Below are positions 28,896-53,330 of a stretch of DNA of 64,000 nucleotides, in pieces. Source of the stretch: Bispira polyomma (taxonomy: Eukaryota); contig OZ287755.1 in NCBI GenBank assembly GCA_965649765.1, positions 54,498,001-54,562,000 on the forward strand. Direction: 5' to 3'. Each line of letters starts with the position of its first letter. The first letter of the stretch is position 1. The position numbers were made by a program, and so were the translations under genes. The notes under the pieces are model-generated. The model saw nothing but the letters and a program-made list of their open reading frames with translations. It was not told the origin of the DNA and searched no databases.

Positions 28896-29471
28896 CCTAG
28901 TACACACGTGTCCACTCAAGTCTGCTGAACTTGCCCACGTGGCCCTTTTGACCAACTGACCACTCCTCCTCCTCCTCTCTACCTCACTAGCCACCTCCTG
29001 ACCATGGTACCTCTCCCTCTTACTGAGTACCTCACTAGTATCCAATGTACCTACTCTAGCCACAGTAGAGGTACCAGTACTCATACACTCCACACTCTTA
29101 CACTGTTCAGTGACCCGTGGTTGCCGTGACAACTTCTGTCTTACTTTATCCTTATTCTCTTTAACGGTGACACTAATGTTATGATAATGTGTCTTAGTCG
29201 TCATGGCCGACTGACTCCTTGACAACATATTGTGATTCTGTTTACTGGTTTCCATGGGAACCCAAAACAAGGAACCAGCAGGGACGATATCTGGGTACTG
29301 GAGGGCTGTGTGATGCTGTGTGTTGGTTTCACTTTCATTCTGTGAGCGTTCTAACACTGCAGAGAGCTGGCTGTAGTCCGTGTATCCAACATAATGTGGA
29401 GATCTCTCTTTGGTTACAACTTGGGGGGAATTTGCCTGGAATTCACTTACAGGTAAAGGTTGGGTCCACAT
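28896..29471 (-). CDS. Putative alternative N-terminal exon, 192 codons
   Basis: Long GC-richer ORF from ATG, ending AGG|GTAAGT in phase 0. Confidence 0.7.
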
Positions 29472-29966
29472 TGTTAACTACATTTTAAGGCCTTTATCAA
29501 AGGACTGTATATAGTGGAACCTTGTTTAAAATCGAATCAGAAGGGACCATAAAAATGTGTTCGACTGAACAGAAATTCTACTTAACAGGGTAAATTTTAA
29601 TTAAAAATATAACTTTTACTTAACTGGTCATTTCAATTATTAGAGTTCTACTTAAAGGGGGTTGACTATATAATTTTAATATAAATATATAGAGTAGAAC
29701 CTCAATTATCCAAAACTATCTGGAGACCAGAATTAATTAAAAGTCAAACTGTTGAAGCCTCAATTTGTGACCTACAAAGATTTCAAGCTCATGGGTTGTG
29801 AAAGAAACTGGTCAAGAATTTTTACAATACCTCAGAGACATAACTGCGAGGTCAAACTGAGGTCAGGGCATGACCTCACTTGTCTAATAAACCCCTCTCT
29901 GACGTTATTTGTTGCCTGTTTTGTTTTAATTAACACTGTGGACTCCAGCTATTTCCCCCTTCTCAC

Positions 29967-30131
29967 CTGTTTACTGTCATTAGTCACATCGTTATACTCT
30001 GTGGTATAATTATACTTCTCCTGTCCTACTTCCTGTTGTTCACTTGTCTCCATTTCCTCCTCTAAAGCCTCATATTTTATTGCCTCAATATCCTGCGACT
30101 CCACAGCCTCCTTTTCAGGTTCAACCTCCAT
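29967..30131 (-). CDS. Putative alternative N-terminal exon, 55 codons, Glu-rich
   Basis: ATG-initiated, coding-like composition, ends CAG|GTGAGA in phase 0. Confidence 0.6.
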
Positions 30132-31485
30132 AATTCTGTGCTATTTCGAATTTGGAAATGATCTTAATACCATAGGCCTGATTTCCCAGGGACATTTAAA
30201 GTTTTGAAGGTCAGGAAAGTAATGTGACTGAAATCACCACGTCTTATCAGTCTGGTCACCATACAGAAACAATTTTATTCTTTGGTGGGAGTCTATTTTA
30301 CACCCATTTATAATTTCTATCTTCCACTTTTTAGGTATTATCACAGAGTCTCACAGCATAATTTTATTTTATTTCCATTAAAACTTCCTGCAATAATAAT
30401 ACCATTCAGTTTATGTGCTATCGATATATTTCAAAAAGTGTAAATAGTATAAATCCTTTGGTAATTCTAAAGTATTCCACACAGAAGAATAACCCTACCT
30501 GGTGATTTCAATGTATCCGATAACACATTTTGTTAATATCACTTACATTTACTTAAATGACTTTTAAGTTTCCTTCAAACAAAAACAACACAAATTTCAC
30601 ATCACATTTTATCACATCTACTTTCTACCTAATTAGTACACCAAATTCTTGTCTAATTAACATCCTCTGCTGCTCAATACAAACTAAACATATCCTGCTG
30701 CATTCATTGAGTGCTCTAAAACTACTTGCAACATTCTGATTCTACAAACTTCTGATACTGAGGCAGAAACCTATCAGCTTACATAATTTGCACGTCAAAA
30801 GAGCTGTAAAAGGTACACAAACTATGACAATAACCACTGCGTCTGTCATTGAATGTGTGTATATTAAGAGTCTGTGCCACATTTGGCACAAAAATCCATC
30901 ATAAATAAATGACACTTTTCTCAATCTGTGGTAGGTGTAAAAGTATTCATCACAGTCAGGTCTTGTTTCCAGTGTTTGATATATACATGTATTCTATACA
31001 CATACACTAACACAGAGGAATTCCTTATAAAACTACCACGACAAAAACTCAAGCTTCATCAATCACGGTATGAATGACTTCATTATATAGAAATGTTGGT
31101 CACTTCTGATACTAGACCTTAAGTTCTACATGTTAAACACATGTATCATTATGAATTTCATAGATATTACCTGTACATGGATATAATGCAGATGAACATG
31201 TACATACACCGGCACATAGCACTCATATTCTTACTTTCAATTCTGTTTATCATATTTCCAATAAATGGATAAATATTTTAGTTTTATGTCATATGTGCTT
31301 CATGTTGAATCTTATATTTTGTATTTGTATCAAATTATTTTCTATAAATGGATGAATATTTTAGTTTTATAGCATAAGTTCATGTTGAATATTATTTGTA
31401 TCAACTCATTTTACATTAAATATTTTAATTTTATAGCATCAGTTTATGTTTAATGTTATTTGGTATTTGTATTATATATTTTTAA

Positions 31486-31961
31486 CATGCTTTATTGATG
31501 CGAAGCATCTTCTAAAGCACAACAACGAACCAACCATGTGTCCTACAACATAGACTGGGTTGTCAGCAGTAGGCAATGGCGTGGTCACATCGGGCCCAAA
31601 GATGTAATCCCACCTATGAAACTAGCAACATTAGCAGGGGGGCCACGGTGGCCTAGTGGTTAGCAAGCATTGCGCTTCACAATCACTGGTCTCTCACCTT
31701 TGGGCGGCGTGAGTTCGAATCCCGTCGATGCCTATGTGGGAAAGGTGGTAGTTCCTTACTGTGGGCCGCTGGTTTCAATGCAGAACCTTGACCGACTGTA
31801 TGCAGTGTTTCCTCCAGCGTTTCCAAATACCTGTCCCAATATAACCTACCAAAAAGGTACTAGAGTGGACGTTAGATATTCAAATTCAAAGCAACATTAG
31901 CAGGAGTCGAACCAGGGACCTTGTGATCATCAGACCAACTCTCTAACCACTAGGCCACGGG
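31486..31961 (-). mobile_element. tRNA-derived SINE family C, split by a younger SINE
   Basis: Head at 31905-31961 (gagtcgaacc B box; accactaggcca A box). Tail tttattgatgcgaagcatcttctaaagc is also seen near 12705, 16460 and 40020. Confidence 0.65.
31637..31890 (+). mobile_element. Full-length tRNA-derived SINE family B with 15-bp TSD
   Basis: A box TGGCCTAGTGG, B box GTTCGAATCC, ttcaaa tail. TSD agcaacattagcagg at 31624-31638 and 31890-31904. Confidence 0.85.
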
Positions 31962-32941
31962 AGATCACGAGTACCATAAGCACTTATGCACATACTAATA
32001 TCTTAAACAGGTTCTCAGAATATTTTTTATATTTTTGTATATTTTGTTTATTCAAAAACATTCTAATTTGATAAGTGTTTTAGCCATAGAAATTGATACA
32101 TGTGCATATAACAGCATCTTATATAAAACATTGGAAAGGATATGGTTTATGGGCATCATGGTTCTGTAAAGTTATACTGAAATGTAAATTGATATGCTAA
32201 TAGTAGCTAATAGAATGTTTACGGTGTATTCTGAATAGACACACCTTTAAGAAGAAAGAAACTGTACCATTTCTATATATTTGTGTGAGTGGCTCCATTC
32301 AAACCGAAAAGAGAAATATTTTAATGACCTTCAAGTTACCATATAAACAGAATTCTTATTTCAGAAATAGACAAAGTTTGTTATAAACTTTTAAAATGTA
32401 TCCTAAAAGTGTTACAGCTACTTAACTTTCCTGTCTACTGTGTATGAATCATATTAAGTAAAATGATATATTATATTAACTCCTGAAAGTAAATCAATCA
32501 TTTTGCTTTAAAATGCATCATAAAATTATAGAAGTATCCACTAGTATGGTTTTGACCATTCACAATCATTAAACTTGCAAAAAAATGAGACTTAAAAAAA
32601 ATAAACAATCAAAAAAAAAAACAGAAAATTTGATTCATTAAACTTTAAAAAAACTTAATTACTTAATTTTATTTTACTGAATGTTATATATCTTATGTTC
32701 GGTTGAAAATTTTTAACGCACAGGAAAGAAGTCAATAAGGATTTAAAAAATACAGCTATTCCAGTAATTGTTCAGGTGAGAACTAAGTTTCCAGCAATCA
32801 AATAAAAATATTAATTTGCAATACAATTCTACGCCCATATATTGCAATAATAATTCCACCCAGCAAATAGTCGTTAACAACAAGCTTCTCTACTTCTCCA
32901 CCAGGGTGACTAATTCCATCACCAAAGCAACTTTCTCACTA

Positions 32942-33087
32942 CTCTAAATCACTTTGAATCCATGTGTCAACTTTCACAGTGCTCTAAATCACTTTGAATC
33001 CATGTGTCAACTTTCACAGTGCTCTAAATCACTTTGAATCCATGTGTCAACTTTCACAGTGCTCTAAATCACTTTGAATCCATGTGT
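32942..33087. repeat. 40-bp minisatellite, about 3.6 near-identical copies
   Basis: (ctctaaatcactttgaatccatgtgtcaactttcacagtg)n. Confidence 0.95.
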
Positions 33088-34435
33088 TAATGCTTTTTTT
33101 TAAGAGTTAATTTCACACAAAACTAGGAACCACTTGAATCCAAAACGATGACCCAAAAGGTCCAAAGCAAATTGTACTGGCCGGTAATTTGTAGAAGATA
33201 CCAGATTTATGGGACGGCTTCGTGTTCTATCATTCCAACAAAGTAACTCATCGAAAAACCACTACCAAAATCATGTAATATTTCCATAAAACACCTGTGG
33301 ATTTTTCTCATTTAATTTACTGGCATTTACTTTGTTATTTAAAATATATATATCCAGTTTTGACTAATTACAAATGTCAATTGTATTATTTTTAAGTTAT
33401 AAAAAAAATATATCAAACACTTGATTATTAAAATTCCATTGTGTGTAATGGTTAAGTTTTACCAGCACATTTTAGGTGTATTGTACCATTAAAGCATCTG
33501 AAAGTGTACTACATACTTCTATATATAGGTTCTGCATTGATAAATAATATAAACATGCAAAATAAAGGAATGTCAATGCATGAGTGTCTTCTCTCTATCA
33601 AATGTTTATACACACACCTTTTCTAATATTACACACACATAATATTGGGTACATCTTATTACCAACATTTGACAATAGGTATTTATATCTTTTTTGAAAT
33701 AATACTCAATTCAAATGTTTTTCAATTATTTGCCACTCCATATATACACATACACACATGAATAGCATCTACATATTTGTGTCTTAAATTCTCAGTCAGT
33801 TTAGATTCCTTTTTTTTCAACTTAATGATTCACTTAACCCTTGAATCATGCAAAACCATTTGCCCTGTCACAATACAGACATACCTTAAAAAGGAAACTC
33901 TTTACAACACTATATACAGGTACTAGATACTCTATATACATCAGTAGGCATCTCCATTTTTGGCAAATCATATATATGTATACACATTTTCGAGATCGGT
34001 GAAATTACCTGGAAATTTTTTTGCTATGAATTTTAGTTCACGTCAGAGAATTGAGTATTTTATAATTAAACTGCAAGTTATCACAAGATAAGGCCTTGTA
34101 TTTAATCAGTACATTGTCTTTGTCTATACAGATCAATAGATTTAAATTACTAAAACATGTGCTGTGTAGTTTCAAGTACTGTATGTTCTCCTCTTGTAGC
34201 AGACAGTTCAAACACAGTATTAACCAGCAGAGAAGTTTTCAGAGAAGTTCTAAGACATTAGTTTCTGGGTTGCTGAGTTTTTGTTGTATTTTTGGTTGAT
34301 TTTTTGGATGTTTTTAACTTGACTTGCTCCTTTAACTTCTAGCCTTTCTTATGAAGTATCAGTTTTGATATTTCTTTTTGCAAAATCTCTTACTTTATGT
34401 GGGGTTCACACTATGGGGGTAAACTGTTTTTTTTT

Positions 34436-34683
34436 AAATTTGAATTTGAATATTTATCGTCCACTCTAGTACCTGTTTAGGTTATATTAGGATGAGTAGT
34501 TGGAAACCCTGGAGGAAACACCGCATACAGTTAGTTGATCAAGGTTCTGCACTGAAACCAGGGGCCCACAATAAGCAACTACCACCTTTCCCACATCGGC
34601 ATCGACAGGAGTCGAACCCACGCCAGCCGATCCCGGAGGTGAGAGACCAGTGATTGTGAAACAAAATGCTTGCTAACCACTAG
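34436..34683 (-). mobile_element. SINE family B copy
   Basis: Reverse complement of 31637-31890; a 3' fragment also lies at 39681-39762. Confidence 0.8.
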
Positions 34684-36091
34684 CGGTATGGAGAAGCAAT
34701 AAGAAGTTGTCAAAATCGCCTATTTACCGCAGGGAATCCAATCTATAATTTTGTTTAACTTCAGCTGGATTAGTATTAGATTTGAACAGTGCGTACAAAT
34801 AAACTATTATTATCATGTAATAGCACTAGTAATGTCATACATTAATTGTAGGTCTATGTTTTAACACAGTTACAGAGATAAACTTATGACATCGTTGGTT
34901 AAAATGATCACATTTGGGCTATTGACTTGGCTGCTAAATAGTGAATACTGATAATGCCCTACCAAATTAAATGTTATAGTATAATATCCTAATACCTTAC
35001 TATATATGTATACACAGTTACAGAGTATTATTAAAGGCTACCAGAAGATTTCTCATTAATGCCGTAAATGCACACAGACGGATTTGGTCTGAAGTCAAAC
35101 ATCCCCCTTGCACATACAAAAACGGTGCACAGGAGGTTCTAAAATGCTGGTAAATAGATTAATTTAAAAGCCATGTGGACAAACATTAACTCTCAGCAAT
35201 CCAATTGCATGTTAACTCAAACATGAGGCAAAACAAGAAGAAAAGCCTGATCCATAAAGGGAATCAGTGGGCTATGAATCTGTACCAGTGAATTCTTCAC
35301 TTAAAAGGTGATATCTTGAGCTCTTTTCAAAGTAAAAGCACAATATACATCTATAAACACTTTTCAATTTTTCGAGATACTCAGAAATGCAAATGATCAT
35401 GTCACTATTGTTTTGACTTTATTGGAAGTTATTGTCATTTTTGCACAGTTTTAAGGCTTTCTAATTACCTTCAGAGTTATAAAGATGTCCACTTTATTGT
35501 GTGAGACAGAAATATTGCCTCCAGCCTTTTTTCTTTGTAATATTTCAACATTTTAAACTATATATATTCAGGCCACTGGCTTAGGACTTAAACCAATTCT
35601 GAAGTAGTAAAATCGGATAAGTAGAAAAGTTAACTGTTTAACACTGAAAAGAAAATTCCTACAAGAACATTGACCTTTGTCCAATGAACATTTAGCCCCC
35701 TGACCCTGACGAACTACCCAGAAAATGACTGGTTATGGTTGATAAAACACATTTTTAATATTCTTACCAATTTCCTGCAGTAAATTAGAGGGAAAACAAT
35801 TGTCTAGACAATTATAACGACCTCATATATAACATGGAGAATCTGTTAAATTTTAATGTGTTAAAGAGTACTGACACAGCTTCTCATAGAGTAACCTGTT
35901 CACACACTGGCGGTATGGTAGGTGGTGCGAGAAGCTATTGTAACTTGTAACCTGGTACATCGGCTGTTCAATCTTGGGCAAATAGATTCCTCATATAAAG
36001 TGAAACTTGTTGAGATAAGTTTCACAGAGGGAAACAGACGATTACAGTGGTAATTACGAGTTGTAGTAGTAATAAGGAAATAGGCGGAGAC

Positions 36092-36232
36092 GGGTAGAAA
36101 CAGGTGATGACAAATGATTACTAGGATGGAAGAGTTACGGTAGTGATACTGAAATAGTCTGAAATATGCGGAAATGGGTAGAAACAGGTGACGACAAATG
36201 ATTACTGAGATGGAAGAGTTACGGTAGTGATA
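36092..36232. repeat. Local tandem duplication, about 85-bp period
   Basis: gggtagaaacaggtga..acaaatgattact..gatggaagagttacggtagtgatac occurs twice. Confidence 0.8.
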
Positions 36233-36785
36233 CAGATGTATTTGTAAATAGCTAGAAACATTTGTTTGACTTTTTTCCACCTTGGGGAGGTGAAAGTTTT
36301 AAACATGCCCAAAACTTCTGCCTCTCTGCCTCCCAGTAATAGCTGACTCACAGTTAAAAAGGTTCAGGAAGAAAGCTAAAGTTAAGGGAAGTTATAGAGA
36401 TTACCAGATGTTTCGCTGTATGACGTTTTTGACTGATGTTTTGGTTTGTTTGTGTTAAAACTCCTCGACTCCTTTTAACTTAAACTTTCTCAGCTATTAT
36501 ATAATATATTTTTATTCCATAGAAGTATCAGAAAGCATATTTTATCTGACTTTATGAATATATAATCTAAAAATCTGTATCGGGTTTTTTGACAGCTCTA
36601 GAAAGGACCAAACCAGGACTTATTTTCAAATTTTAATATTTTCATTTTTAGCTGTTATAGCTTGCAAAATGTTCGAAATTAGTCCGAAGATAGTGGCCCA
36701 CTAGTTACTATCCCTATAGACAAAAGAAAGTACTAGTCATCAGTACAGAAGCCACTATAGCACCCCAAACAAATCTATCACTTAA

Positions 36786-37868
36786 ACTAGACCTAGCGCA
36801 TCAGAGAACCGATGCATATTTGTATCCACCAAAAAGACAAAGCACCCGCAGTAGCAAGCACTCTAGCGAGCATCCAAGCTAGAAGCCTATGATTTCCTAT
36901 AGGGCATTTACGCTAAAGCCTTAAATGGCACAAGTGGGTTTGACATTGCAACCTGTGGGACGAATAATAAGTCTGTGATAGGCACCTTAAAGTTTGGCGT
37001 ACCCGTTTGACCTTGCATGAGGGATGCAAGGTTAAATGAGACCAAAAGATTAGCAGCCTATGATTTCCTGTAGGTTGGTTTCACATCCCAAACCTCTACG
37101 ACCATGATTTTCTTAGGTTGGTTTGACATTCCAAATCTCTAGGACCAATAATAAGCGAGTTATAAGCACTTTTAAGTTTGGTTACGCTTATTTGATCTTT
37201 AAGGAGGGGCCTAAGGTCAAACCTGACTAAATCAAAAGACTCCTAGCCCATGATTTCCTATAGGTTGGTTTCACATTGCAAGCCTGCAGGACCAATAATA
37301 AGTGAGTTATAAGCACTTTTAAGTTTGGTTATCCTCATTTGACCTTGAATGAGGAGCCCAAGGTCAAACCTGACCACATCAAAAGATTCCCAGTTCATGA
37401 CTTCCTATAGGTTGGCTTAACATGAAAAATCTCTAGGACCAATAATAAGGGAGATGTAGGCACTTTCAAAGTCTGCTATGTGGGGTACTTTGGCACTCCG
37501 TGGATGACCTTAAATGAACTCTGTGGATGACCTTGAATGAAGAGCTTCAAGGTCAAATGTATATATCTGTTATACATATCACCTATGAAGAGATTCAACC
37601 TTCTAGTTACAAGAACCAGCCAGTAGAAAAAGGTAGATAATTTTCAAAGAAAGGCCCATGGCGGCCATCTTGTTTTTTAGAATGAGGCTAATTTCAGTCG
37701 CAGAGATGCTTACCTCCCAATGAAGATATCCTGCAAATTTGGCTAAGCTAGCTAGTCTAGTTTTCCGCTGAGAGTGTTAAAGGTAAAAATCTCTCTACGG
37801 TGGCGGCGACGGTGGCGGCGACGGCGTAGCCAACGCTAAACCAAAGTATCCACCACGGTGGATACAAT
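36786..37868 (+). mobile_element. Second Helentron/HINE-like element with internal tandem repeats
   Basis: 5' gtatccacc (36822-36830) pairs with the 3' hairpin gtatccacc-ac-ggtggatac (37846-37865). About 4 diverged units (agcctatgatttcctatagg) and a ggtggcggcgac microsatellite. A related fragment lies at about 25905-26160. Confidence 0.6.
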
Positions 37869-38428: not shown

Positions 38429-38641
38429 CAGTAAGAAATCTAAAATTCGCTCCTGTATCTATAATTCGCCACCCCTAAAATTTAAGCCAAATATTGTAAA
38501 AACTGGCGAAAAAAACTGGTAAGGAAGGCAAATTATTCATAAAAATATTAATTTAAACAAATATTTACCACAATTCTACCCAAATCACAACATTTTCTAG
38601 GTTGCGAATTTCAGATGGTGGCAAATTTTATACTCCTTACA
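38429..38641. mobile_element. MITE family gagtaaggaatctaaaatt
   Basis: Matches 15589-15818. Confidence 0.65.
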
Positions 38642-41020: not shown

Positions 41021-41030
41021 TGTGACTCAC

Positions 41031-41192
41031 CTGCCTGACTTTCTGATTGGTTGCTGTACTTGTGGTGGTGGTAGGTGTGGACTTGTCTCCGTCCCTTAAC
41101 ACCTTGTACCTCACCTGGTCTGAGATGGGAGGTGTCTGGACCAGGTAGAGAGCCATGAGGCTCTGCCTGAACCAGTCATCCTCCACACTCAT
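41031..41192 (-). CDS. Putative alternative N-terminal or cassette exon, 54 codons
   Basis: ATG-initiated GC-richer ORF ending CAG|GTGAGT in phase 0. A possible acceptor would extend it to 41201. Confidence 0.65.
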
Positions 41193-41473: not shown

Positions 41474-43141
41474 TACTTCAGTAATCTGTAAATAATCTCA
41501 TGTAGAATCCCTAGTGTCACTGCCTCATTGTACATATCGGCACAATTCCAATAACATGAAGGGTGGATGATTTGCTTTTTAAATGATTCTTTTTAAGAGT
41601 CTACATTTTCCTCTTGTAACATATCTAACTTATATTCTTGGGGTAACAGAATGTACTTTAAACAATTCATTCTGGAACTACATTTTTTAGTCATTCCAGG
41701 AGTTCTAAGTGGTTACCTGTGAGGGTTCCGTTCTACCCTCAAATTGAGGCTAACATGAGTTTAAATGACTCACTCTTTGAGGTCACATGATGACAATGTG
41801 TCTCACAGCCATACTTTCGCACAGAGTAAAGCTATCCCATACACTGTCACTTCACAATAATATTACAGCTATGTGTAAAAAGTATACTGATAGTTCAATA
41901 CCATAACAATGACATTAAGCCATTTTTATTTGGCAAAATTTAATCCATTTTATACCGTAATGAACTAGTTATTTATCTTTCTTTATGTATTTTATGGGAA
42001 ATTCCCCATTAACAAAACCATCACTAAATGTTTATCTATTTACATTTCCATACAAAATAATTCTATTCATGCTGTTTCACATATCCTTGCATATATATCT
42101 GGACTATTATGTAAATATAATTCTATTTCATGTAATAATAAACTGCCGGAATTTCTCTTACAAAGACCTGCCTTGTAAAACCCAGTACTGCGCATTGTGT
42201 ACATATCCATTTTATAACCCAATATCTAAATACTCCAAAGCAATCAAAGCCAGCTTTCAAGGCATCGTGTATTTATTATCAATAATAAATGTCAATTTTT
42301 GCTTTCAAAATCAAGCTTAATAGTATACACAACTACACATATACACAACATATTGAAACCTCCATGTCACTTAAATCATTGCAATACTTTATGATTCCAA
42401 TTTCATAAATGCCATGTTGCTATCATGATATCACATGATAACTGCCTACTAGCTGGGCCTGGTTTGTTTTATTACTATTATTTACTGAAAGAAACTCAAG
42501 TTCCTCCACACTATGTATACAAATTATAGATTACTTTAAATGGGGAAGAGTACTCATTCAGTGTCAAAGTATTAAGAGGCCACTGGAAGCCATTGCATTA
42601 AGATGACTGCTCTCATAAGAGGAGAGACAACAGTTGTGATGTACTGGGTAAACATTTAATAAACACAACTTAAGGCTGATCTTAAATTGGTGGGGCACTA
42701 AGACATCAAGAGCAATAAAATTTGTTTGTATGTCAATATATAATGTCATGTACAGAGCAAAATACTACAATGTGAATATCCAGTATAAGTTACACACAAA
42801 AAACAGTTTTCATTTAAGATTTTACAGGTCACCTTTAATAGTTACATATCATACTTTTTAACTTCTAAAAGCGATGTGTATAACTATATATTTCACTCAT
42901 TTATCCTTAGATTTTTATTAAATGTGTCACAAAGGTGTTTTTTTTAACTTTGAGTTTGCATTATGTTAAGGCTGTATCTTTAAGAAGGTGGTTTTTAATT
43001 TAAGTTTGTATGGCGGTAATAAAGAAGGTCATTTTTAGTTTTAGTTTGCATTATGTTAGGGCGGTAATAAATAAGGTTGTTTTCAGTTTGAGTTTGTATT
43101 ATATTAATGAGGTCAAATTAGGAAAGTAGTTTTCAGGTTGC

Positions 43142-43375: not shown

Positions 43376-45230
43376 ATAAGGCTGTACTTAAAGACTAAGG
43401 TCTAAAAGTGCCCTGGTTTTTGTGGGACACGAGAGAGCTACAGAGAATTGTAGCTCACAAACCCAATACACAGGTGTGAGCACAAAAATCAATAGATATT
43501 CAATAACTCAGCCTCTGCAGCTGGGACATCTAAGCAAAGGGATCTCTGTAAATACTTAAACTCCCTGCAAGGCTTTCAACTTTACTTTATACATCATGTG
43601 TATTATTATAATGAATAAAGTCAATATGTTAAAAGAAAGAGCATAATATTTTTACAGTAAATATTCACAAGCTTATATGGCATTTGTGCAGTTTTGTGAA
43701 AAATATCTATACAGTGTGTATCTGAAAATTACTTTTTTTTTCAGTTTTCACAGAAAGGTCGGCCTGTGTTACGTATGCAAGTGGTATGATATTTTTTATA
43801 TTGGCATCATCTGTATATTCAGTAAGTAGAACTTTACCATGTGCTGACATACATATACAAGGGAAAAGTATACAAATCTAATATATAGATTGTTGACTGG
43901 CGCTCAAACAGTTGACAAAAGACTAATGTATTGTCGGTTATGGACATGTGGGTAAACAGGATACCTTAACAGTCAGTATACCGAATTAACAATACCATAA
44001 AATAGTTGCTTAGGATAATTCATTCTAGAGACTAAGTGGATATTTCCATGAAGGCAATTTTCTGAGGCAATCAGCCGATGGCCGACGGCAATTTTATTGG
44101 TTTCATTGATTTAGAACTATCTGTTTCCATGTGAGCAATGCCGATAGGCGGCAGGCAATGTTATGCGCTCCTCCTAGCGAAAACATAAAAATTGTTGATT
44201 GCCATCGCCCACCGCCTGATTGCGGTAGCCCCATTGCCGACATGGAAACATGAACTTTTATTGCCCTGGAATGTGGGCTCACTATTTTGTTGTGGATAAA
44301 GCAAAGGCCAGCTATTCTTAGGATGTGCCAGCCTAAAGTACTCCTTATACACAGGAAGTACCATTATTAACAAATTAAGATTGACACAAAAACATCATAA
44401 TGTACTCAACACATGCAGAGATTTCTGCACATCTATACATAATGTTTCCATAGACACACTGTCTGCTAGGTTTGATAACATTGTACAGGAATCAAATGGA
44501 GTACTAAGTATCTTATCATTCCTCAATATAGGCAGCTGTGACAGAAGGATTACATCGGCAATATTATATATGATAATATCGGTACAGTGACAAGATCAAT
44601 ATCTACTGTTAGGACTCTACATTAAGTTTATAGTACATGTATTTGCATTTTAAAAATCAAACATTAAAGTTACTGTATCACATATACATATTGATACAAT
44701 AATTGTAAGCCTGACTGCAGTGAAGTCACAGTGAAGGCAAGGATCTATATGGGGACATTGTGAAGATAAGATCTTAAAAACATTATGAACTGCACAAATG
44801 TGATTGCTTTCGTTAAATCTATTGTTAATAATACTGTCATAAATGATTTTACTATAACCAGTTGACCCAGGTATTGTCTTTTGTTTATATACCTTAGAAC
44901 ATTAAGCTCTTGACGATATTGTCTGTTCACTCGGCTACAAGTCGATGGACAAGTGTATTCGCCAGTGCCATGTCTGTCCCCAAGCAGTTGACAGTATAAA
45001 ATATTACATTGCATTGTATAGCCCCTCAGCACATAGGAATAAAATCTATTTTGTACACTGCATTTGACATAAAGAAACAGATTTTTTCATTTGTAATGTA
45101 ATCAGTTGTTGCAAAAACGTCCTTTGTGACGTCATAAAAGTGGATCAAAGTATTTTCCCTCAGTACATTGAGTATTATTAGTAGTATTATTACATGCCAC
45201 TTTTTATACATAAAATCCCTGTATTTAATA

Positions 45231-48200
45231 TCACACATTACCTAGCATTAGTTTTAGACTACTTACACACAGCTTCCTGAAGGTCCTGAGCACTCCATCT
45301 TCACTGTACTTTCCACCTTTTTTTCTGGAAAGTTCATCTCGTTTGTAAGCATCTCTCCTCTCCCCAACTGCTAGACTCACAGAATTGTGCACTGTGTTCC
45401 GTTTGATCACAAGCTTTGACTGGTATCTATCAGTCACACCATTTACATTTATATTCTCTGCCTTTTCCCCTTGTTTTTCACTTATAAATAATGGTTGATT
45501 TCCATATTTTTTAGTATCCTCATTTGACCAAGGGTTATTAACTACAACTTCAAGGCCTTGAATGTCATCTTCAATATCACTATTATGACAAGACCTTGAC
45601 CTATCAACACACTTAGTTTGTTCTTGAGCTATAAGATAATGCTGATATGCTTCCAGTGAAGAGTCAGATATGTAAGACGTAGCTGAAGAATCCCTATTAA
45701 ACGCAGTTTCTGTGTCAAAACTGTTCCTCCAAATCAGTGGGGTCAGTCTGTTCTTTTCCCAGAAAGCTGAATCCTCATCAGAAGAACAGGTCCATTGTTT
45801 CTCAAGATCAGAATCTGGACAGTTACAGTAAATGCTATAACCATTCTCTGTGCTTGTAGCACAAAATACTGACAAAGAAACAGATGACATGACTTCCTCA
45901 TGGTATACTTCAGTATATCTTTTGACTTCCACATCCATACTAAATAGGACAGCAGTCAGGGCCAGTCTAAACATGTCACCTGGGTTGTGTACAACTGGCT
46001 GACTATGTTGCAAAAACATTTTCTTATCCTGCACACCATCGAGTTTAGAATGACAGTCATACTTTAAGTTAGGCCTAGAAGATATTGCAGTTGTTACAGA
46101 TTTGTTAATTAGTTCTGCATCTTCAGTACAAGTAGAATTACTACTAGTGTTTATGACATCATCTAACCAGCTTTGATTGGACGCATTAACTGGTGCACAA
46201 AGATTTTCCAGAATATCCAGACAGAGCCGCTCAGCAAATTCATCGACCTGTTTTGCGACAACAATTTCCTTGTGTACAATATCACGTGAGACTCTTGAGG
46301 GGATCTTTAACTCGGAATCTAAACCACAGTCTACAGCCGGTGATTGTTTTGTTCTCAATAAGTTCATCCCTCTACCTCTAGTATGTCTTACTTTCACATG
46401 TTTTATATGTTCACCACTTGTGACTGTTTCATGGTTACGTCTCTTTTCTGGGGCTCTGTCTACACTTTGCCAGGTACCTTTTTCAAATGTCACCAGGAAT
46501 GCTGTGGACTGCTCACCTTTATAAATCTCAAACATGTTGCCACTCACATGATTTTTGGGGTCACCATGTGAAAATGGCTGTTTATACTTTGAACTCCATT
46601 GTTTCAATCCACTGAACTTTTTACATGATGTTGATCTGGAAGAATAATTTCTGTTGTTTCTCTGTAAAATGCTATTGACCTCAACATTTGTATTGCCATG
46701 ACCAATAATTGTACTTCCATCAGCAAATACATGGTCACCAGTATTGTTGTCATTCAATGTATGTTCATCACTCAGAGAGACTTCTTTCTGCTGTTCCATA
46801 ATGTCCTTAGCACTGTCTTCTTTAATTAAACATATGTTCAGAACACTCTGACTATTGCTACCTGCTACCTCTGCACCATTTATGGCCACACCATCAATAG
46901 GGCAGTCACATTCACCACAACTGTCCTCAATAGTCAGGCTGTTTTCTAGTTTTGCGCCGGCTCTAGCCTCAGTTTCTGGAGAAAGCTGGACTTGTGTACC
47001 TAAACATGTATCTGCTATAGTAGTATGAGTGGTACAGCATTCAGATATATGAGAGAGTTTTGTATTTTCAGCAAAGTTTTCCATTTGTTCATTATCATTC
47101 GCTTTATGATCAACTACCAATATACTACCACTGAGAGGTTGTATCAATGGGCCGACGACTACATTTTCTCCACCCTCGTCTCTATCATTTCCTTGACCTG
47201 TGCTTGAAGCAGGTGAATTTTTATCACACAGATCATACACGTCATCACTAATTTCAGGTTGAAGAGAATTAATACCACACCCTTCTTCTTTACGATTATA
47301 ACTGTCTTCTACAATTTGGGTTTGATCATTTGTATGAGACATTGTTTGATCATTTTCATCTATTTCATTATCATCCATTACAGAGTTGTTTGAACTGTGA
47401 GTCAGCAAGAAGGTGTCACTGGTGACTTGTGCAAGTTTTACTGAACTCTCATTCACTTTGTATCTATGGTCATTAGATTCATGACATTCTTCATCATCAC
47501 TCACAACTGGAGAATTAGAATTTACAGAAGCTCTTCCAGTAACCTTTTCTTCAGGCACATCATCATATAAACTCTGAACCAGTGACAGAAGGTCACTGTT
47601 GATTAGTGCAAGCTTTATTGAACTCTCATTCCTTTTGTCATGAGTATAGACATCTTCAGGCACACCATCACAAGAACTCTGAACCCACGACACAAGGTCA
47701 CTGTTGGTTTGTGCAAGCTTCACTGAACCTTCACTGACATTGTCATGATCATGGACATATTCTTCATTATCAGTCACAACTGGAGTATCAGAATTTAAAG
47801 AAACTGTTTCATAATGCCTTTCTTCAAGCATATCATCATAAGAACTAGGAACTGGCGACACAAGGTCACTGTTGGTTTGTCCCAGCTTCACTACTGAACT
47901 GTCACTCACTTTATCATTATCACTAACAACTGAAGTATCAGAATTCACAGAAGCTGTTCCAATAAATGCTTCTTTAGGCACATCATCATATGAACTCAGA
48001 ACCAGCGACACAAGGTCACTGTTGACATGTGCAAGCTTCACTGAACTTTCACAGACTTTGTCATGATCATGGACATATTCTTCATTATCACTCACAACTG
48101 GAGAATTAGAATTCACAGAAGCTGTTCCAGTAAACTTTTCCTCAGGCACATCATCATATGAACTCTGAACCAGTGGCACAAGGTCACTGTTGATTTGCGC

Positions 48201-49724
48201 AAACTTCACTGAACTCTCATTCCGTTTGTCATAAGTACAGACATCTTCTTCATTATCACTCACAACTGAAGTATTAGAATTTACAGAAGCTGTACCAGTA
48301 TGGTTTTCTTCAGAAAGATCATCATACAAACTCTGAACCATTGGCACAATGTTGCTGTTAGATTGTGCAAGCTTCACTGAACTGTCAATCACTTTGTCAT
48401 TAGCACTGACATCTTCTTCATTATTGCTCAAAACTGAAGTATTAGACTTTACAGATTGTGAAGTTGTTGCAATATGCTTTTCTTCAACCAGATCATCACT
48501 CCCACCATCAGAAAGACTTAAGTTGCACAAGGTATCGTCACTGTCAGTAGAAGCATATAGAATGCCAGATGGGCTTTTCATTTGCATCGTAAAATGTTTC
48601 ATCCTTTGGCTATATTCACTAACCTTCAAATGTACAACAGGTGAATCATTCTCCAAGTCATTTTGTGTATCTTTATCAGTACCATTTTTTTGAGCTCTAG
48701 TGAGGTCTTCTAGTGGAGTACTAGTTCTATATTCTCCAGTAGGTCTGACAGTAGGATAAACATCAGTGGTTTCTAGACAGTTAGAATGTCCTATCATGTT
48801 ATAAAAATGAGGCCAACTAACCTCACATTCAATAGATACATCCTCTGAAGTATCATCAAAGCCTGCAATGTTAATTTCTTCTCGCTTTAGGCAACTCGTA
48901 GTTGTGTCATCAGGCAATGAATCTTGCAAAGACATTTCATCAGATATATCCCCTACACTGTTTTTGCGACATCTGAAACCAGCTTCACATGAGACTATAC
49001 TGCAAACTGCATGGCTGTAACATAATTTTTCCCACATCGGCAAAACATTTTCATCTGTGTTGATTTGACAATGCTCACCATGATGATTTGGTTCACAACT
49101 GTTATGGTCACAAATATTACCTTTGCCAGTGTGATACAATTCTAAGTGATTTTCCTTCACATTATTATCCTGAGAAGAAGTACAATTCAACCCTTTTAAT
49201 TTTGTATTTGGGACATGTACACTAAATTCATCTAACTCAGTTACAACTTTACTCATGACATATTCCTGCACAGTGTTATCACTTACTGTATTCCAGCACC
49301 AGTGTAAAATGTCACCAAAGCTCAGAGGTACACCCACAGAATCAAATATACCATCAGTGAAAAATCTCTGAAATTTATCAAAACTCAAACCAGAAGATAA
49401 TTTTTCATTAGTGTCTAGATGTTTTGTAGGTTCTTCTTGGTCGTTTTGTACACACCTTTCATTGTTCTCTGACAACCACAACTCTAATGATCTTGCAACT
49501 TCATCTAATAACCTTGTGATCTTGGCATTCTTGCTTGTCAATCTTTGGCTGGACCTTTTAGACCATGACACCTGACATGGTTGAACAAGGCATTTGGTGC
49601 AATAACTGCCTTCGCAAAAGTCACAGAATGGCAGAAAACGGCCTGAGACAGTGAACAAAGGCAGCCTATATCCATCATAGAGTAACCTCGGAATATGCTT
49701 TCTTGTTCCATTCCGGGTCTCCAT
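45231..49724 (-). CDS. 1497-aa uninterrupted acidic Ser/Asp/Asn-rich ORF; giant alternative first exon (to 45267) or nested intronless gene
   Basis: 4.5-kb open frame in AT-rich DNA, Kozak context gccATGG, phase-0 GTAAGT donor 11 codons before the stop. No RT or transposase motifs seen. Confidence 0.85.
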   Translation of the reverse strand: METRNGTRKHIPRLLYDGYRLPLFTVSGRFLPFCDFCEGSYCTKCLVQPCQVSWSKRSSQRLTSKNAKITRLLDEVARSLELWLSENNERCVQNDQEEPTKHLDTNEKLSSGLSFDKFQRFFTDGIFDSVGVPLSFGDILHWCWNTVSDNTVQEYVMSKVVTELDEFSVHVPNTKLKGLNCTSSQDNNVKENHLELYHTGKGNICDHNSCEPNHHGEHCQINTDENVLPMWEKLCYSHAVCSIVSCEAGFRCRKNSVGDISDEMSLQDSLPDDTTTSCLKREEINIAGFDDTSEDVSIECEVSWPHFYNMIGHSNCLETTDVYPTVRPTGEYRTSTPLEDLTRAQKNGTDKDTQNDLENDSPVVHLKVSEYSQRMKHFTMQMKSPSGILYASTDSDDTLCNLSLSDGGSDDLVEEKHIATTSQSVKSNTSVLSNNEEDVSANDKVIDSSVKLAQSNSNIVPMVQSLYDDLSEENHTGTASVNSNTSVVSDNEEDVCTYDKRNESSVKFAQINSDLVPLVQSSYDDVPEEKFTGTASVNSNSPVVSDNEEYVHDHDKVCESSVKLAHVNSDLVSLVLSSYDDVPKEAFIGTASVNSDTSVVSDNDKVSDSSVVKLGQTNSDLVSPVPSSYDDMLEERHYETVSLNSDTPVVTDNEEYVHDHDNVSEGSVKLAQTNSDLVSWVQSSCDGVPEDVYTHDKRNESSIKLALINSDLLSLVQSLYDDVPEEKVTGRASVNSNSPVVSDDEECHESNDHRYKVNESSVKLAQVTSDTFLLTHSSNNSVMDDNEIDENDQTMSHTNDQTQIVEDSYNRKEEGCGINSLQPEISDDVYDLCDKNSPASSTGQGNDRDEGGENVVVGPLIQPLSGSILVVDHKANDNEQMENFAENTKLSHISECCTTHTTIADTCLGTQVQLSPETEARAGAKLENSLTIEDSCGECDCPIDGVAINGAEVAGSNSQSVLNICLIKEDSAKDIMEQQKEVSLSDEHTLNDNNTGDHVFADGSTIIGHGNTNVEVNSILQRNNRNYSSRSTSCKKFSGLKQWSSKYKQPFSHGDPKNHVSGNMFEIYKGEQSTAFLVTFEKGTWQSVDRAPEKRRNHETVTSGEHIKHVKVRHTRGRGMNLLRTKQSPAVDCGLDSELKIPSRVSRDIVHKEIVVAKQVDEFAERLCLDILENLCAPVNASNQSWLDDVINTSSNSTCTEDAELINKSVTTAISSRPNLKYDCHSKLDGVQDKKMFLQHSQPVVHNPGDMFRLALTAVLFSMDVEVKRYTEVYHEEVMSSVSLSVFCATSTENGYSIYCNCPDSDLEKQWTCSSDEDSAFWEKNRLTPLIWRNSFDTETAFNRDSSATSYISDSSLEAYQHYLIAQEQTKCVDRSRSCHNSDIEDDIQGLEVVVNNPWSNEDTKKYGNQPLFISEKQGEKAENINVNGVTDRYQSKLVIKRNTVHNSVSLAVGERRDAYKRDELSRKKGGKYSEDGVLRTFRKLCVSSLKLMLGNV
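47415..48450 (-). repeat. In-frame coding tandem repeat, 168 bp / 56 aa, about 6-7 diverged units
   Basis: aaggtcactgttg at 48012 and 48180; protein unit SNxxVVSDNEE..SSVKLAQ.NSDLV..VQSSYDD. Confidence 0.9.
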
Positions 49725-52613
49725 GGCATTTGTAGATGTGTTTGTTTATTATTAAACATAAAATAATAGATTAAAACCAATGGTTAGTCTATTTGTCTGT
49801 TGGTCTATTTGGTTTATTAATGGTTTTCCATACCTTAAACATATTCACTGGTTATATAATACTGCTTACGATAAGTTTGTTTGATACATCAGAGTTATTA
49901 TAATAGTTTTTGCCATAGCTATACTGTTTGCCATTGCTATACCATGCAAATGACAATTGTAGTATGGAACAAATAAATGACTATTTGAAGTCTATCCATG
50001 TCTCAGCAAATAACTTGTTAACACCATTATAAGCTATTTTTAAATATATCCACTTACTGTATAAACACGATTTATTATTACATTCACAGTTCAATAAAAC
50101 AACAACATCAATCCATTAGATTAGACGAAATTATAGTACCTAATACCTGTTTTGCACATTATAATGTTACAGTCATATAATGTAAGCAAAGCTTAAAACT
50201 AATTATGAGCAATGACTGCAACTGGGCAGGAAGTCATGATAATAATTGACTCTAATCTTATGCTATGTGGCAATTTATTTGAAAATCTAACAGTATATAC
50301 ATTACAGAGTCTTGGATAAACAGTTCACACCTTCAATGGAATGCATATCCATATACATTTCTGCCAATGAAGAGTAAAAGTAGTTTGAAGTGTAACAAAT
50401 ACATGCTTTGTCACTCCCCATTTCTTTGGGCGTCTCAAATTTCATAACCCTGAGAACATGTAATCTGATCAAACAAGACTAATATCATATACAAAATGGA
50501 CATACAAACCATTTAAAACTGTCCAGCTCTCCAATGTTTTCTTTACCAATCCAAAATGTATACATTTGTTTAGTTTCCAGCAGTAATGTGTATACCTTTA
50601 CAGGGTGACTTTCTACATTTGGTGTATGTTTCCTAGTGCACACATAGTCACCTGTGTATTTAGTTATTTTCCCACAATACTTCTGGGTTAACTTTCTTCT
50701 CAGGTGGTATATAAGAATGTACAAGTGTTAAAAACACTGTTATATTTAGCTTGAACTTTAATTAGGCTGCCAAGTATTACAACAAGAGGTACTTCTGATG
50801 TAAAACAGTTGTTGATTTCATGCCATTTAATTGTTGTTTTCATTTTCTTTTCTCCAGAAACACTTATTAGTTTCAGTTCTGGGAGTAAAAATACACCCTT
50901 TCCTTTGATCCTTCATAGGTTCTTACTAAGTGCCAAAATCCTTCATACATTTTATGTACATATATATGTAAAATGCTACACGAGTTAGACCCATTGCAAT
51001 AATATCAAAATGGTGACACAAGTTCACTTTTTTTCATGACACACATTATTAGCGATTTCCTTTCATTAAAAGTTACTGTAAAATTTAAGCTTAAATTATT
51101 CTATAAAGACATAGACCTCTGAGGTCATCACATTCAATATCTACGTCATCATTAAACCACTTCCAAATTGAATAAAATATAAGCACATTCTTCAGGTGAC
51201 GTATCAAACCTTCGCGCCAGAAGATTTAAGTAACCACAGTGATTTAACTGTATTAATGATTTCAACTGACACAATTGCATGTGTCCACTTACTACGCAGT
51301 AAACACAATTTCGAACCTAACTATATAATCCAACTCTTCCTGAAATAACCTATTGGAACCTTGTTACAATGTATCCACAAATTTTGTCAGGGCACAAAGT
51401 TAGTGAAGTTTTAACTTCACTGTCTTGGAGTGAAGGATTAAAAAGGTGCATAATGTAAATTCTAGGAGACACTTAATACCAGTTAAACTCCCAGGTTTGT
51501 TACATAAACAACTACTTAAAATTTTGTTTCTATTTTATGCTGAGACATGATTCCAATTTGCTTCCACTAGTACAGTTATTCAGTGTACACCAAATCGCCA
51601 ATACTGTTCTTAACACTACACTACGGAATATGCAAATAAGGCATATATAAAATAACACTAGATTTGCCCTTATTTTTGATCACTTTTAAGTTTTAACTAG
51701 GTCAATTCATCTTGCCAAGAGGAATATCACATCATATTGATCTAATTAAAGATTTTGTAACATACTGAAGTAATTACACACAATGTATTCCCTTTTTTGA
51801 ACCACAACTTGGTGTTGAGAAGAAATCTGGTGGATATTACAAGCGGCAGATGAAATATTCTGAGCATTTGCGCCATGAATTAATCGTAACCTTTTTGTGG
51901 GCAAATAAAAAATATTTCCTAGCCAACGAGTAATGTACAATTTAAAAATATTTTGTTGAGAAAACTTAAGGCCTTTATAGATAGCCGACTACATATTACG
52001 ACACGACACGACACGACTATTCACATCAAACATGACATATTACTACCACATAATCCATCCAAAATACTTTTTTTTATATTCAAAAACTTTATTCTTGATT
52101 ATGAAGATACAAAGGTAGTTACAATATACCAGTATATACATTATTAAATAACATGGAAATCCAAAATATAATACATCAACAAAATTGAGATTATTTTCCT
52201 TTGCAGCCATTGTTTGCAAAAACAATATATGCAATGACAAGACAAGATTTATCCAAGTTAAATTGTCGTGTTGTGTAGTGTAATGTTGAGAGCAATCTAT
52301 ATAATCTCTGTATATTTTGTTACAGTCAAACCCCTTCAAGTAGAACTCTGACAAATGGAATTACCTGTTAAGTAGAAGTTAGTTTAGGGTCCCATTGTAA
52401 AGATTTATAATTAACATTCACACTCTTATGTGGAATTTCTGTTTAAGTAGAACACATTTTTATGGTACCTTCAGATTTCACTTAACAGGGTTGCACCCTT
52501 TTTTTTATTGTGTTGTCAGCGGTCTATGATGGGCTTTATGAGAATATAAAATTTAACTACTCTGGTTGTCCGGGCTTAGAGTATCCCCTAAATGTACTGA
52601 CTATTTAACTTAC

Positions 52614-53330
52614 CTGAGTGGAGTAGGCCCCTGGATGTGCCGGCCCCTGGATGGCTAGCTGTGACTGTGATTGTCTAGTACCCCCTCTCACATTGCCCAT
52701 CACCAGAGCAACATAACTGTGACTGTACTGACTGCTATTACTACCACTAGAAACAGGCCTAGGGATCCTAGACATGAACTGGGAAGGCTGTACACTTGAC
52801 AAGGAGTTGAATTTACAGTGAGAACAACAACTGACGTTTCTCTGTTTCTGTGATGCTGTGTTTTCTATACCTTTTTTATATACCTGAAGACTCCTACCAC
52901 TTCTGGGTACTACGTCTCTGCAAGTATTGGCCTTATCTGTTTTATCAGGTTTAAGCCAATTGTGTACTCCTAGTGTAGCATAATTTGAATCGGAATGATC
53001 AGAGAATTCATCAGGAGACGATAACTCATAGTTATTACCATCCCTATTAACGTTATCGTCGCCATAGTAATAACCTTCCTGACTCTCATCATATGATCCA
53101 GACCCATCCTCACTCAAGCTGTATGACAACAATTCACAATCCTCCTCGTCCTCAACTTTAATGTCTCCCAACCCACGGTTACCATGGTAACCACCACGCT
53201 CGGTTTCCATGGTATTGTCTGTTGGTTTTGTACTAGGATTGGTACTACAACTGTGACCATCTTTCTCATCCACTCCTTTGAACCTCACCCTGTATGGTCT
53301 ACCTCTAGTACTGCTTATATCAGCTAACAT
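52614..53330 (-). CDS. Putative alternative first exon, 239 codons (Ser/Asp-rich, SRIPRP motif)
   Basis: ATG-initiated long ORF ending CAG|GTAAGT in phase 0. Confidence 0.75.
53178..53191. promoter_or_regulatory. Perfect palindromic RFX X-box-like motif GTTACCATGGTAAC
   Basis: 14-bp perfect palindrome inside the exon; a second near-match GTTTCCATGGTATT at 53203-53216. Confidence 0.45.

What the first reader, a model, noticed from the sequence alone, without database searches (positions are those of the whole stretch)
28896..53330. Array of unrelated variable N-terminal exons in phase with one RIM-BP constant region
Seen: five minus-strand ATG-initiated ORFs (52614-53330, 45267-49724, 41031-41192, 29967-30131, 28896-29471; 239, 1486, 54, 55 and 192 codons). 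Each has a GT(A/G)AG donor exactly at a codon boundary within 2-11 codons of its stop, matching the phase-0 acceptor of exon 25582. They show no visible similarity to each other. Established: RIM-BPs scaffold calcium channels at presynaptic active zones, and mammalian RIMBP3 acts in the spermatid manchette. Inference: promoter choice swaps disordered N-termini of about 50 to 1500 aa onto one scaffold. This is a variable-first-exon system reminiscent of clustered protocadherins, but built from non-paralogous exons.
Basis: partly seen in the sequence, partly recalled or inferred. Interest (0 to 1): 0.8.

Follow-up and report, generated by a model that had tools for sequence, protein, structure and literature searches.

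The report
Five alternative RIM-BP first exons
An invertebrate gene for the synaptic scaffold RIM-BP is preceded by five unrelated, evolutionarily conserved start-codon exons, one of them 1,486 codons long, which most likely give the same scaffold five different disordered heads through separate promoters; no RNA data were available to prove the splice junctions.

Summary
Exon 25582 has a strong phase-0 acceptor.

New evidence supports real exons. A related species (ENA contig, dS above 1) has all five in the same order and strand, upstream of the same first common exon (93% aa identity). Each keeps its ATG, an in-frame stop just upstream, a purine at -3 and the phase-0 donor. dN/dS is 0.10-0.40 for the four exons tested. 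Protein similarity ends at the donors. No other conserved coding block lies between them.

None can be an internal coding exon, because there is no phase-0 AG between the upstream stop and the ATG. The downstream gene is a complete RIM-BP: coiled coil, SH3-I, FN3/Ig_RIMBP2, SH3-II, SH3-III.

The exons are single-copy and mutually unrelated. They have no Pfam domain, and almost no relatives among 1.84 billion representatives.

The junctions to 25582 and the separate promoters remain inferred. No RNA run exists for this organism in the tools.

The protocadherin comparison holds only for layout. There is no paralogy and no shared promoter motif. The closest analogue is the alternative-promoter N-termini of Unc13. 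This is a new member of a known kind, of moderate interest.

The parts
52614..53330 (-). Variable first coding exon V1 (239 codons; Ser/Gly/Asp-rich; conserved motif FMSRIPRP)
   Evidence: The ATG has an in-frame stop 2 codons upstream and no AG between them. Donor is CAG|GTAAGT. The orthologue in the relative (rel 5417-6316) has the same MLAD start and donor CAG|GTAGGT; dN/dS 0.40. Single copy in the genome.
45267..49724 (-). Variable first coding exon V2 (1486 codons; acidic, net charge -106; conserved N-terminal about 450 aa with a Cys-rich motif, and a conserved C-terminal part)
   Evidence: In-frame stops lie 8 codons upstream with no AG before the ATG. Donor is TGT|GTAAGTAG, identical in the relative. 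Orthologue P0001/rel 10001-13498 is 30-37% identical; dN/dS 0.34-0.36. A distant homologue P0002 exists in a third species. Single copy. No Pfam domain.
47548..48455 (-). Tandem repeats (period 105-168 nt; protein units ...SVKLAQxNSDLVxLVQSSYDDVPEE...) inside V2
   Evidence: Found by TRF and in the repeat listing. No counterpart aligns in the relative: tblastn does not cover V2 residues 423-1005.
41031..41192 (-). Variable first coding exon V3 (54 codons; the best conserved)
   Evidence: An in-frame stop lies 3 codons upstream. Donor is CAG|GTGAGT in both species. 67-69% aa identity; dN/dS 0.10.
29967..30131 (-). Variable first coding exon V4 (55 codons, Glu-rich)
   Evidence: An in-frame stop lies 3 codons upstream. 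Donor is CAG|GTGAGA. The collinear counterpart in the relative (rel 52766-52924, 53 codons) has the same ME(V/I)E start, VTNxxxQ end and CAG|GTGAGA donor, and lies about 420 bp upstream of the V5 orthologue. This is the weakest of the five.
28896..29471 (-). Variable first coding exon V5 (192 codons; Ser/Thr/Arg-rich)
   Evidence: An in-frame stop lies 2 codons upstream with no AG. Donor is AGG|GTAAGT in both species. 54-58% aa identity over residues 1-192; dN/dS 0.26. Single copy.
25448..25582 (-). First common (constant) exon, start of the RIM-BP coiled-coil N-terminal region, with a phase-0 acceptor
   Evidence: A polypyrimidine tract plus cag| lies on a codon boundary. It is 93% identical at protein level to rel 55057-55191, with the same tttttcag| acceptor; dN/dS 0.03.
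23568..23705 (-). Second common coiled-coil exon
   Evidence: 96% identity by tblastx to rel 56588-56725.
21657..21887 (-). Third common coiled-coil exon
   Evidence: 65-73% identity to rel 57270-57500.
20472..20570 (-). Fourth common coiled-coil exon
   Evidence: 90-94% identity to rel 58666-58767.
54071..54129 (-). Conserved non-coding block about 740 bp upstream of the V1 ATG (candidate promoter or 5'UTR element)
   Evidence: 83% nucleotide identity to rel 4466-4524, with stops in all frames.
43454..43528 (-). Conserved non-coding block between V2 and V3
   Evidence: 80% identity to rel 16315-16389, with stops in all frames.
42197..42317 (-). Conserved non-coding block about 1 kb upstream of the V3 ATG (candidate promoter or enhancer)
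   Evidence: 73% identity to rel 18542-18659, with stops in all frames.

Best explanation
The 5' end of a RIM-BP (RIMS-binding protein) gene carries a tandem series of five alternative first coding exons (V1-V5) spread over about 25 kb. Each exon begins with its own start codon and ends in a phase-0 splice donor. None has an acceptor that could receive an upstream coding exon. A transcript started upstream of any one of them would therefore join that exon's donor to the first downstream acceptor in phase, which is the common exon at 25582. This would place one of five unrelated, low-complexity N-terminal extensions (54, 55, 192, 239 or 1486 aa) in front of the same coiled-coil/SH3/FN3/SH3/SH3 scaffold. 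Shown: exon anatomy, coding constraint, conservation of order, start codons and donors in a second species, and the RIM-BP identity of the downstream gene. Inferred: the actual junctions, one promoter per exon, mutually exclusive use, and any tissue specificity. In Drosophila the N-terminal coiled-coil region of RIM-BP binds the ELKS/Bruchpilot scaffold and governs vesicle recruitment (PMC7337501). The variable heads would therefore sit at the scaffold-facing end of the molecule. They could alter its partners or position, as the alternative N-termini of Unc13 do.
For: (1) Anatomy: ATG, length divisible by 3, and GT(A/G)AG at a codon boundary for all five; phase-0 acceptor at 25582. (2) In the window an in-frame stop lies 2-8 codons upstream of each ATG, with no phase-0 AG between them. 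None can be an internal coding exon fed from upstream. (3) The related species contig ena:ERZ22147071:ctg29198l has V1, V2, V3, V4, V5 and four common exons in the same order and strand. ATGs and donors are conserved: CAG|GTA(A/G)GT, TGT|GTAAGTAG, CAG|GTGAGT, CAG|GTGAGA and AGG|GTAAGT. (4) Coding constraint for V1, V2, V3 and V5: third-position identity is lowest, dN/dS is 0.10-0.40 and dS is above 1. V4 was not included in that test. (5) Protein alignments run from residue 1-5 to the last codon before the donor. Nucleotide identity is raised in the first 60 nt of each CDS and near random in introns beyond +12. The contrast is weak at some boundaries: the last 60 nt of V1 and the 60 nt upstream of V5. 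(6) All 10 start codons (5 exons in 2 species) have a purine at -3 (sequences). My estimate of the chance probability is about 0.001. (7) No other collinear conserved coding block lies between V1 and 25582; the three conserved blocks there are non-coding. (8) A third, more distant species has a V2-like ORF (P0002) with a phase-0 GT donor 6 codons before its stop. About 1 kb upstream on the same strand lies a possible V1-like ORF, which shares only the FMSRIPRP motif (E 0.018) and has a phase-0 GTAGGT. (9) The downstream gene is a full RIM-BP on the same strand: SH3-I, fn3, Ig_RIMBP2 (PF25523, 94 bits, E 5e-27), SH3-II and SH3-III. (10) The exons are single-copy and so not transposon-derived.
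Against: There is no RNA evidence at all. The only public runs holding this DNA are genomic (share 0.92-0.96 over a mostly intronic stretch). No junction, transcription start or mutual exclusivity is demonstrated. Continuity between the coiled-coil exons in the window and the SH3/FN3 exons 68-100 kb further on rests on strand, order and known RIM-BP architecture, not on transcripts. V4 conservation is weak: 27% identity in a Glu-rich low-complexity segment, supported mainly by position, length, start and donor. The V2 orthologue in the relative carries one in-frame TAG at codon 895. This could be an assembly error, a small intron or decay of that exon in that species. Unconserved or very short exons that could accept these donors would escape the comparison.
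Confidence: 0.7

Rival explanations
1. Some of the exons, most plausibly V1 and V2 at the far end, belong to one or two separate, lineage-restricted genes lying head-to-tail upstream of RIM-BP. Their donors would splice to short, poorly conserved 3' exons of their own rather than to exon 25582. The true RIM-BP first exons would be only V3-V5 or a subset.
For: V1 and V2 lie 20-27 kb from exon 25582. The V2 family and a possible V1-like ORF (motif-level similarity only) travel together as neighbours in a third species on an 8-kb contig where no RIM-BP exon is visible. V2 is large enough to be a protein on its own. No junction data exist.
Against: No collinear conserved coding block exists between V2 and V3, or anywhere before 25582, that could serve as their 3' exon. 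The linkage and order V1-V2-V3-V4-V5-common exon is kept in a species with dS above 1 despite large intron changes and a retroelement insertion. All five donors share phase 0 with the common acceptor.
Confidence: 0.15
2. The ORFs are independent single-exon genes or microproteins that terminate at the stops 2-11 codons after the supposed donors. The GT(A/G)AG motifs are not used as splice sites.
For: Every ORF does reach a stop shortly after the donor. V2 was separately noted as a 4.5-kb single-exon ORF (finding s1-582001).
Against: The donor consensus is conserved in the relative at the same codon in all five. The residues after it are not: the tails are VSSLKLMLGNV versus VSSK, VS versus VGG, and VSRTY versus VSF. 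Protein similarity ends exactly at the donor. Five of five in phase 0 with the next acceptor is unlikely for unrelated genes.
Confidence: 0.05
3. The exons are chained in one long constitutive transcript (V1 to V2 to V3 and so on to 25582), not used alternatively.
For: They are all on one strand, in one phase, within one locus.
Against: In the window each exon has an in-frame stop 2-8 codons before its ATG and no phase-0 AG in between. The only early phase-0 AGs inside V2 lie in purine-rich sequence without a pyrimidine tract. Chaining would therefore truncate the protein. The start codon and the residues right after it are conserved in all five.
Confidence: 0.05

Closest known systems
Alternative-promoter N-terminal isoforms of active-zone scaffolds, especially Unc13/Munc13 (the Aplysia unc13 case is cited; the Drosophila and mammalian cases are from my own knowledge)
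   Same: One constant functional core is preceded by alternative first exons that encode unrelated, largely disordered N-termini, chosen by transcription start site. For Aplysia unc13, four forms are described that arise from a family of alternative promoters (PMC9282427).
   Different: Here the gene is RIM-BP. There are five variants. One variable exon is a single 4.5-kb orphan exon. No transcript evidence exists yet.
Clustered protocadherin / UGT1A variable-first-exon clusters
   Same: A tandem row of first exons, each with a donor but no acceptor, lies upstream of shared constant exons. The layout implies that promoter choice determines the exon used.
   Different: The variable exons here are not paralogues and share no upstream sequence element. 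They number five, differ 27-fold in length and encode low-complexity cytoplasmic sequence. There is no evidence of stochastic choice.
RIM-BP family (Drosophila Rbp, C. elegans RIMB-1, vertebrate RIMBP1/TSPOAP1, RIMBP2, RIMBP3)
   Same: The constant part has the family architecture: N-terminal coiled coil, SH3-I, FN3 cluster with Ig_RIMBP2, SH3-II and SH3-III. The N-terminal region is the ELKS/BRP-binding end in Drosophila (PMC7337501).
   Different: The five N-terminal extensions have no detectable counterpart outside two related contigs. I found no report of such a first-exon series for a RIM-BP gene in three literature searches. That is not an exhaustive check.

Membership tests
RIM-BP gene family | Three SH3 domains in conserved order: SH3-I in the N-terminal half, SH3-II and SH3-III as a C-terminal pair | tested here: met
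   SH3_2/SH3_9 hits fall on exons at about -68 kb (L011), -97/-98 kb (L026) and -100 kb (L027) relative to the window start. All are on the minus strand and in order. The individual exon hits are partial domains because introns split them.
RIM-BP gene family | FN3 / RIMBP2-type Ig-like domain cluster between SH3-I and SH3-II | tested here: met
   PF25523 Ig_RIMBP2 scores 94.3 bits, E 5.4e-27. Weaker fn3 hits fall on neighbouring exons in L012.
RIM-BP gene family | N-terminal coiled-coil region belonging to the same transcript as the SH3/FN3 core | tested here: inconclusive
   Heptad-like, highly conserved exons (93-96% aa identity to the relative) lie at 25582, 23705, 21887 and 20570 on the same strand upstream of the core. 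No transcript links them to the core, and no direct alignment to a named RIM-BP was possible.
Alternative first coding exons (alternative promoters) | Each exon has its own start codon and a donor, and lacks an acceptor that continues an upstream reading frame | tested here: met
   in two species. In the relative a few AGs lie between the upstream stop and the ATG of V3 and V5, but none is a convincing acceptor.
Alternative first coding exons (alternative promoters) | Each exon is spliced directly to the same common exon, and each has its own transcription start | not testable with these tools
   No RNA run for this organism. No transcript-derived proteins of relatives.
Protocadherin/UGT1A-type variable-exon cluster | Variable exons are tandem paralogues | tested here: not met
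   All-against-all blastp: best E is 2.3.
Protocadherin/UGT1A-type variable-exon cluster | A shared conserved promoter element lies upstream of every variable exon | tested here: not met
   No 9- or 10-mer is shared by at least 4 of the 5 upstream 800-bp regions. The 8-mer count is no higher than in random controls. Degenerate motifs were not modelled.

The most novel reading that the evidence does not exclude
RIM-BP in this lineage is produced both as an ordinary scaffold and as a giant isoform. In the giant form a fast-evolving, orphan 1,486-aa acidic repeat-bearing head (V2) is fused to the ELKS-binding coiled coil. This would give RIM-BP a Piccolo/Bassoon/CLA-1-like long tether function, or a non-neuronal role. 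The five-head series would be a conserved, promoter-encoded code for where RIM-BP sits at the active zone.
Probability: 0.25. Interest if true: 0.55.

Novelty: new member of a known kind. Interest (0 to 1): 0.4.

Why it matters
If the junctions are confirmed, this is a clear example of a core active-zone scaffold whose scaffold-facing end is diversified by promoter choice rather than by gene duplication. The heads evolve much faster than the core (dN/dS 0.10-0.40 against 0.03). One of them is a lineage-restricted 4.5-kb exon with almost no relatives in public protein space. It would give a testable handle on how N-terminal disordered extensions tune RIM-BP placement or partners. It would also warn annotators that the large orphan ORF in this locus is probably a RIM-BP first exon and not a gene of its own. 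As a mechanism, alternative first exons are ordinary.

Tried and rejected
(1) RNA evidence. The look-up of sequencing runs on window:23400-31300 returned only three genomic holders from one study and no RNA run. Read laying was therefore not used, because DNA contigs cannot show splicing. My stretch was mostly intronic, which could hide a weak RNA holder. Even so, no RNA run of the same species label was added.
(2) Transcript-derived or annotated proteins. The word search with V2 found only the ENA ORF P0001. V5 found only the ENA ORF P0003. V3 found nothing. The length window of that tool excludes full-length fusions.
(3) Exhaustive profile search with the conserved V2 N-terminus. It found only P0001 and a weak P0002, so no annotated fusion to RIM-BP could be recovered.
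(4) Pfam on all five exons: no significant hit.
(5) ESM Atlas with the V2 N-terminus and with V5: no usable hit.
(6) AlphaFold of V2 residues 1-450: mean pLDDT 28.9, unusable for a fold search.
(7) The transposon origin of the exons was rejected because they are single-copy. The three large ORFs in the relative's intron have no Pfam hit. From their sequence I read them as a retroelement with a tyrosine-recombinase-like end, inserted there and not part of the gene.
(8) The conserved blocks between exons were tested as extra exons and rejected, because all frames contain stops.
(9) A scan of 30 kb further upstream found no additional ATG-to-donor exon by the same criterion.
Every exon was searched by reference on its own.
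Full report
**What is there**

The window is G000:C8:54498001-54562000 of a 1.04-Gb eukaryotic assembly with about 35% GC.
- V1 is 52614-53330 (239 codons).
- V2 is 45267-49724 (1486 codons).
- V3 is 41031-41192 (54 codons).
- V4 is 29967-30131 (55 codons).
- V5 is 28896-29471 (192 codons).

Each starts with ATG and has a length divisible by three. Each is followed at once by GTAAGT, GTAAGT, GTGAGT, GTGAGA or GTAAGT. The frame closes 2, 11, 9, 5 and 5 codons later. The exon at 25582 is preceded by a pyrimidine tract and cag| on a codon boundary.

Judged by the donor criterion alone, the short ORFs could be chance. On the plus strand 1 of 32 ATG-ORFs of at least 50 codons has such a donor, against 6 of 41 on the minus strand.

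**The downstream gene is RIM-BP**

Following the minus strand beyond the window start, I fetched 150 kb and listed open frames. Pfam finds these domains, in order:
- an SH3 exon about 68 kb below the window start;
- fn3 and Ig_RIMBP2 exons at 72-78 kb (PF25523, 94 bits, E 5e-27);
- SH3 exons at 97-98 kb;
- a further SH3 exon at about 100 kb.

This is the SH3-I / FN3 cluster / SH3-II / SH3-III order that defines the family (PMC7337501). The exons at 25582, 23705, 21887 and 20570 encode heptad-like, charged helices. They fit the conserved coiled-coil N-terminal region. That they sit in the same transcript as the core is inferred.

**Comparative test**

A word search with V2 found one protein, P0001, on a 205-kb ENA contig. 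I walked along that contig with seven look-ups and built a 60.5-kb composite. It carries orthologues of all five exons and four common exons, in the same order and on the same strand.

| Exon | Position in relative | aa identity |
|---|---|---|
| V1 | 5417-6316 | 31% |
| V2 | 10001-13498 | 30-37% |
| V3 | 20672-20827 | 67% |
| V4 | 52766-52924 | 27%; found by position, length, start and donor |
| V5 | 53343-53894 | 54% |
| First common exon | 55057-55191 | 93% |
| Next three common exons | downstream of these | 73-90% (tblastn) |

In every case the ATG is conserved, together with the next residues:
- V1: MLAD in both species.
- V2: ME in both species.
- V3: MSVEDDWF against MSEDDWF.
- V4: MEVE against MEIE.
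- V5: MW in both species.

An in-frame stop lies just upstream of each ATG, and the phase-0 donor is conserved. The residues after the donor are not conserved.

Further points from the comparison:
- All ten start codons have a purine at -3 (sequences).
- For V1, V2, V3 and V5, codon-position identity is lowest at the third position, and dN/dS is 0.10-0.40 with dS above 1. The first common exon gives 0.03. V4 was not included in this test.
- Nucleotide identity is raised in the first 60 nt of each coding sequence and is near random in the introns beyond +12. At some boundaries the contrast is weak, for example the last 60 nt of V1 and the 60 nt upstream of V5.
- A third, more distant contig (Logan, 8 kb) has a V2-like ORF (P0002) with a phase-0 GT donor 6 codons before its stop. 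About 1 kb upstream on the same strand lies a possible V1-like ORF that shares only the FMSRIPRP motif (E 0.018). It has a phase-0 GTAGGT near its stop.

**Can they be anything but first coding exons?**

In the window there is no phase-0 AG between the upstream in-frame stop and the ATG of any of the five. The stretch before the V2 ATG is A-rich with no AG at all. An upstream coding exon therefore cannot read into them.

A six-frame comparison of the whole interval with the relative shows no further collinear coding block between V1 and 25582. The three conserved blocks (54071-54129, 43454-43528, 42197-42317) have stops in all frames and look regulatory.

The only conserved phase-0 acceptor downstream of the five donors is 25582. 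This supports the alternative-first-exon reading, but it is an argument from anatomy and conservation, not from transcripts.

**What the heads are**

- They are single-copy.
- They are unrelated to one another (best E 2.3).
- They are rich in Ser, Asp, Glu, Asn and Thr.
- They have no Pfam domain.

V2 has a conserved N-terminal part of about 450 aa that includes a Cys-rich motif (FCDFCEGSYCTKC) and several short invariant motifs. It also has a conserved C-terminal part and an internal tandem-repeat expansion. No counterpart of that repeat stretch aligns in the relative.

A profile of the V2 N-terminus found only P0001 and P0002 among 1.84 billion representatives. AlphaFold gave pLDDT 28.9, and the Atlas gave nothing. 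The heads are fast-evolving, probably disordered, lineage-restricted sequences.

**What could not be done**

The single sequencing-run search returned only three genomic holders. No junction, start site or tissue pattern could therefore be examined, and read laying was not used.

**Comparison with known systems**

The layout resembles protocadherin or UGT1A clusters: first exons with donors and no acceptors, in a row before constant exons. Two defining features fail. The exons are not paralogues and share no upstream element.

The better analogue is the alternative-promoter N-termini of other active-zone scaffolds. Aplysia unc13, for example, has four forms from a family of alternative promoters (PMC9282427).

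In Drosophila the RIM-BP N-terminal region binds Bruchpilot/ELKS and is needed for vesicle recruitment (PMC7337501). The variable heads would extend that end of the molecule.

**Verdict**

- The five exons are real and conserved.
- The alternative-first-exon interpretation is the best explanation (about 0.7) but lacks RNA proof.
- The protocadherin analogy is superficial.
- This is a new member of a known kind, of moderate interest.

The earlier scan note s1-582001 on the 4.5-kb ORF describes the same V2 exon. My data agree that the ORF is real and of an unrecognised family, but they argue that it is a spliced first exon rather than a single-exon gene.

Noticed in passing
related contig composite 44210-48860 (L020:12163-16813): Three consecutive large ORFs (557, 474 and 491 aa) lie in the intron between the V3 and V4 orthologues of the relative and are absent from the window. 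They have no Pfam hit. The last ORF looks like a tyrosine-recombinase-type retroelement protein. I read it as a DIRS/Ngaro-like insertion.
   Followed up: partly
related contig composite, codon 895 of the V2 orthologue (about 12683-12685; L001): A single in-frame TAG interrupts the V2 orthologue, yet in-frame similarity to the window continues to the donor. It could be an assembly error, a small intron or incipient decay.
   Followed up: partly
window 36785-37853: Tandem and dispersed repeat (147-bp period at 37102-37466), 80-84% identical to a repeat in the relative at a non-syntenic place (rel 16595-17260). It is a repeat family shared between the two species.
   Followed up: partly
window 25300-25420: The intron just downstream of the first common exon holds a short interspersed repeat with more than 40 copies at 75-83% identity across the genome.
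   Followed up: no
window 5570-6550: A roughly 140-170-bp tandem repeat is also present as an array in the relative (rel 35500-36260, 63-88% identity). ORFs on both strands there are repeat-derived.
   Followed up: no
window 45267-49724, residues 30-46 of V2: A conserved Cys-rich motif (C-x2-C-x4-C-x2-C in the window and the relative, partly kept in P0002) sits at the very N-terminus of V2. It may bind metal. No fold could be predicted.
   Followed up: partly
window coordinates 83180-83920 (L014), minus strand: A 246-codon ATG ORF lies about 30 kb upstream of V1. It has no phase-0 donor and was not characterised. It may be the neighbouring gene or a mobile element.
   Followed up: no
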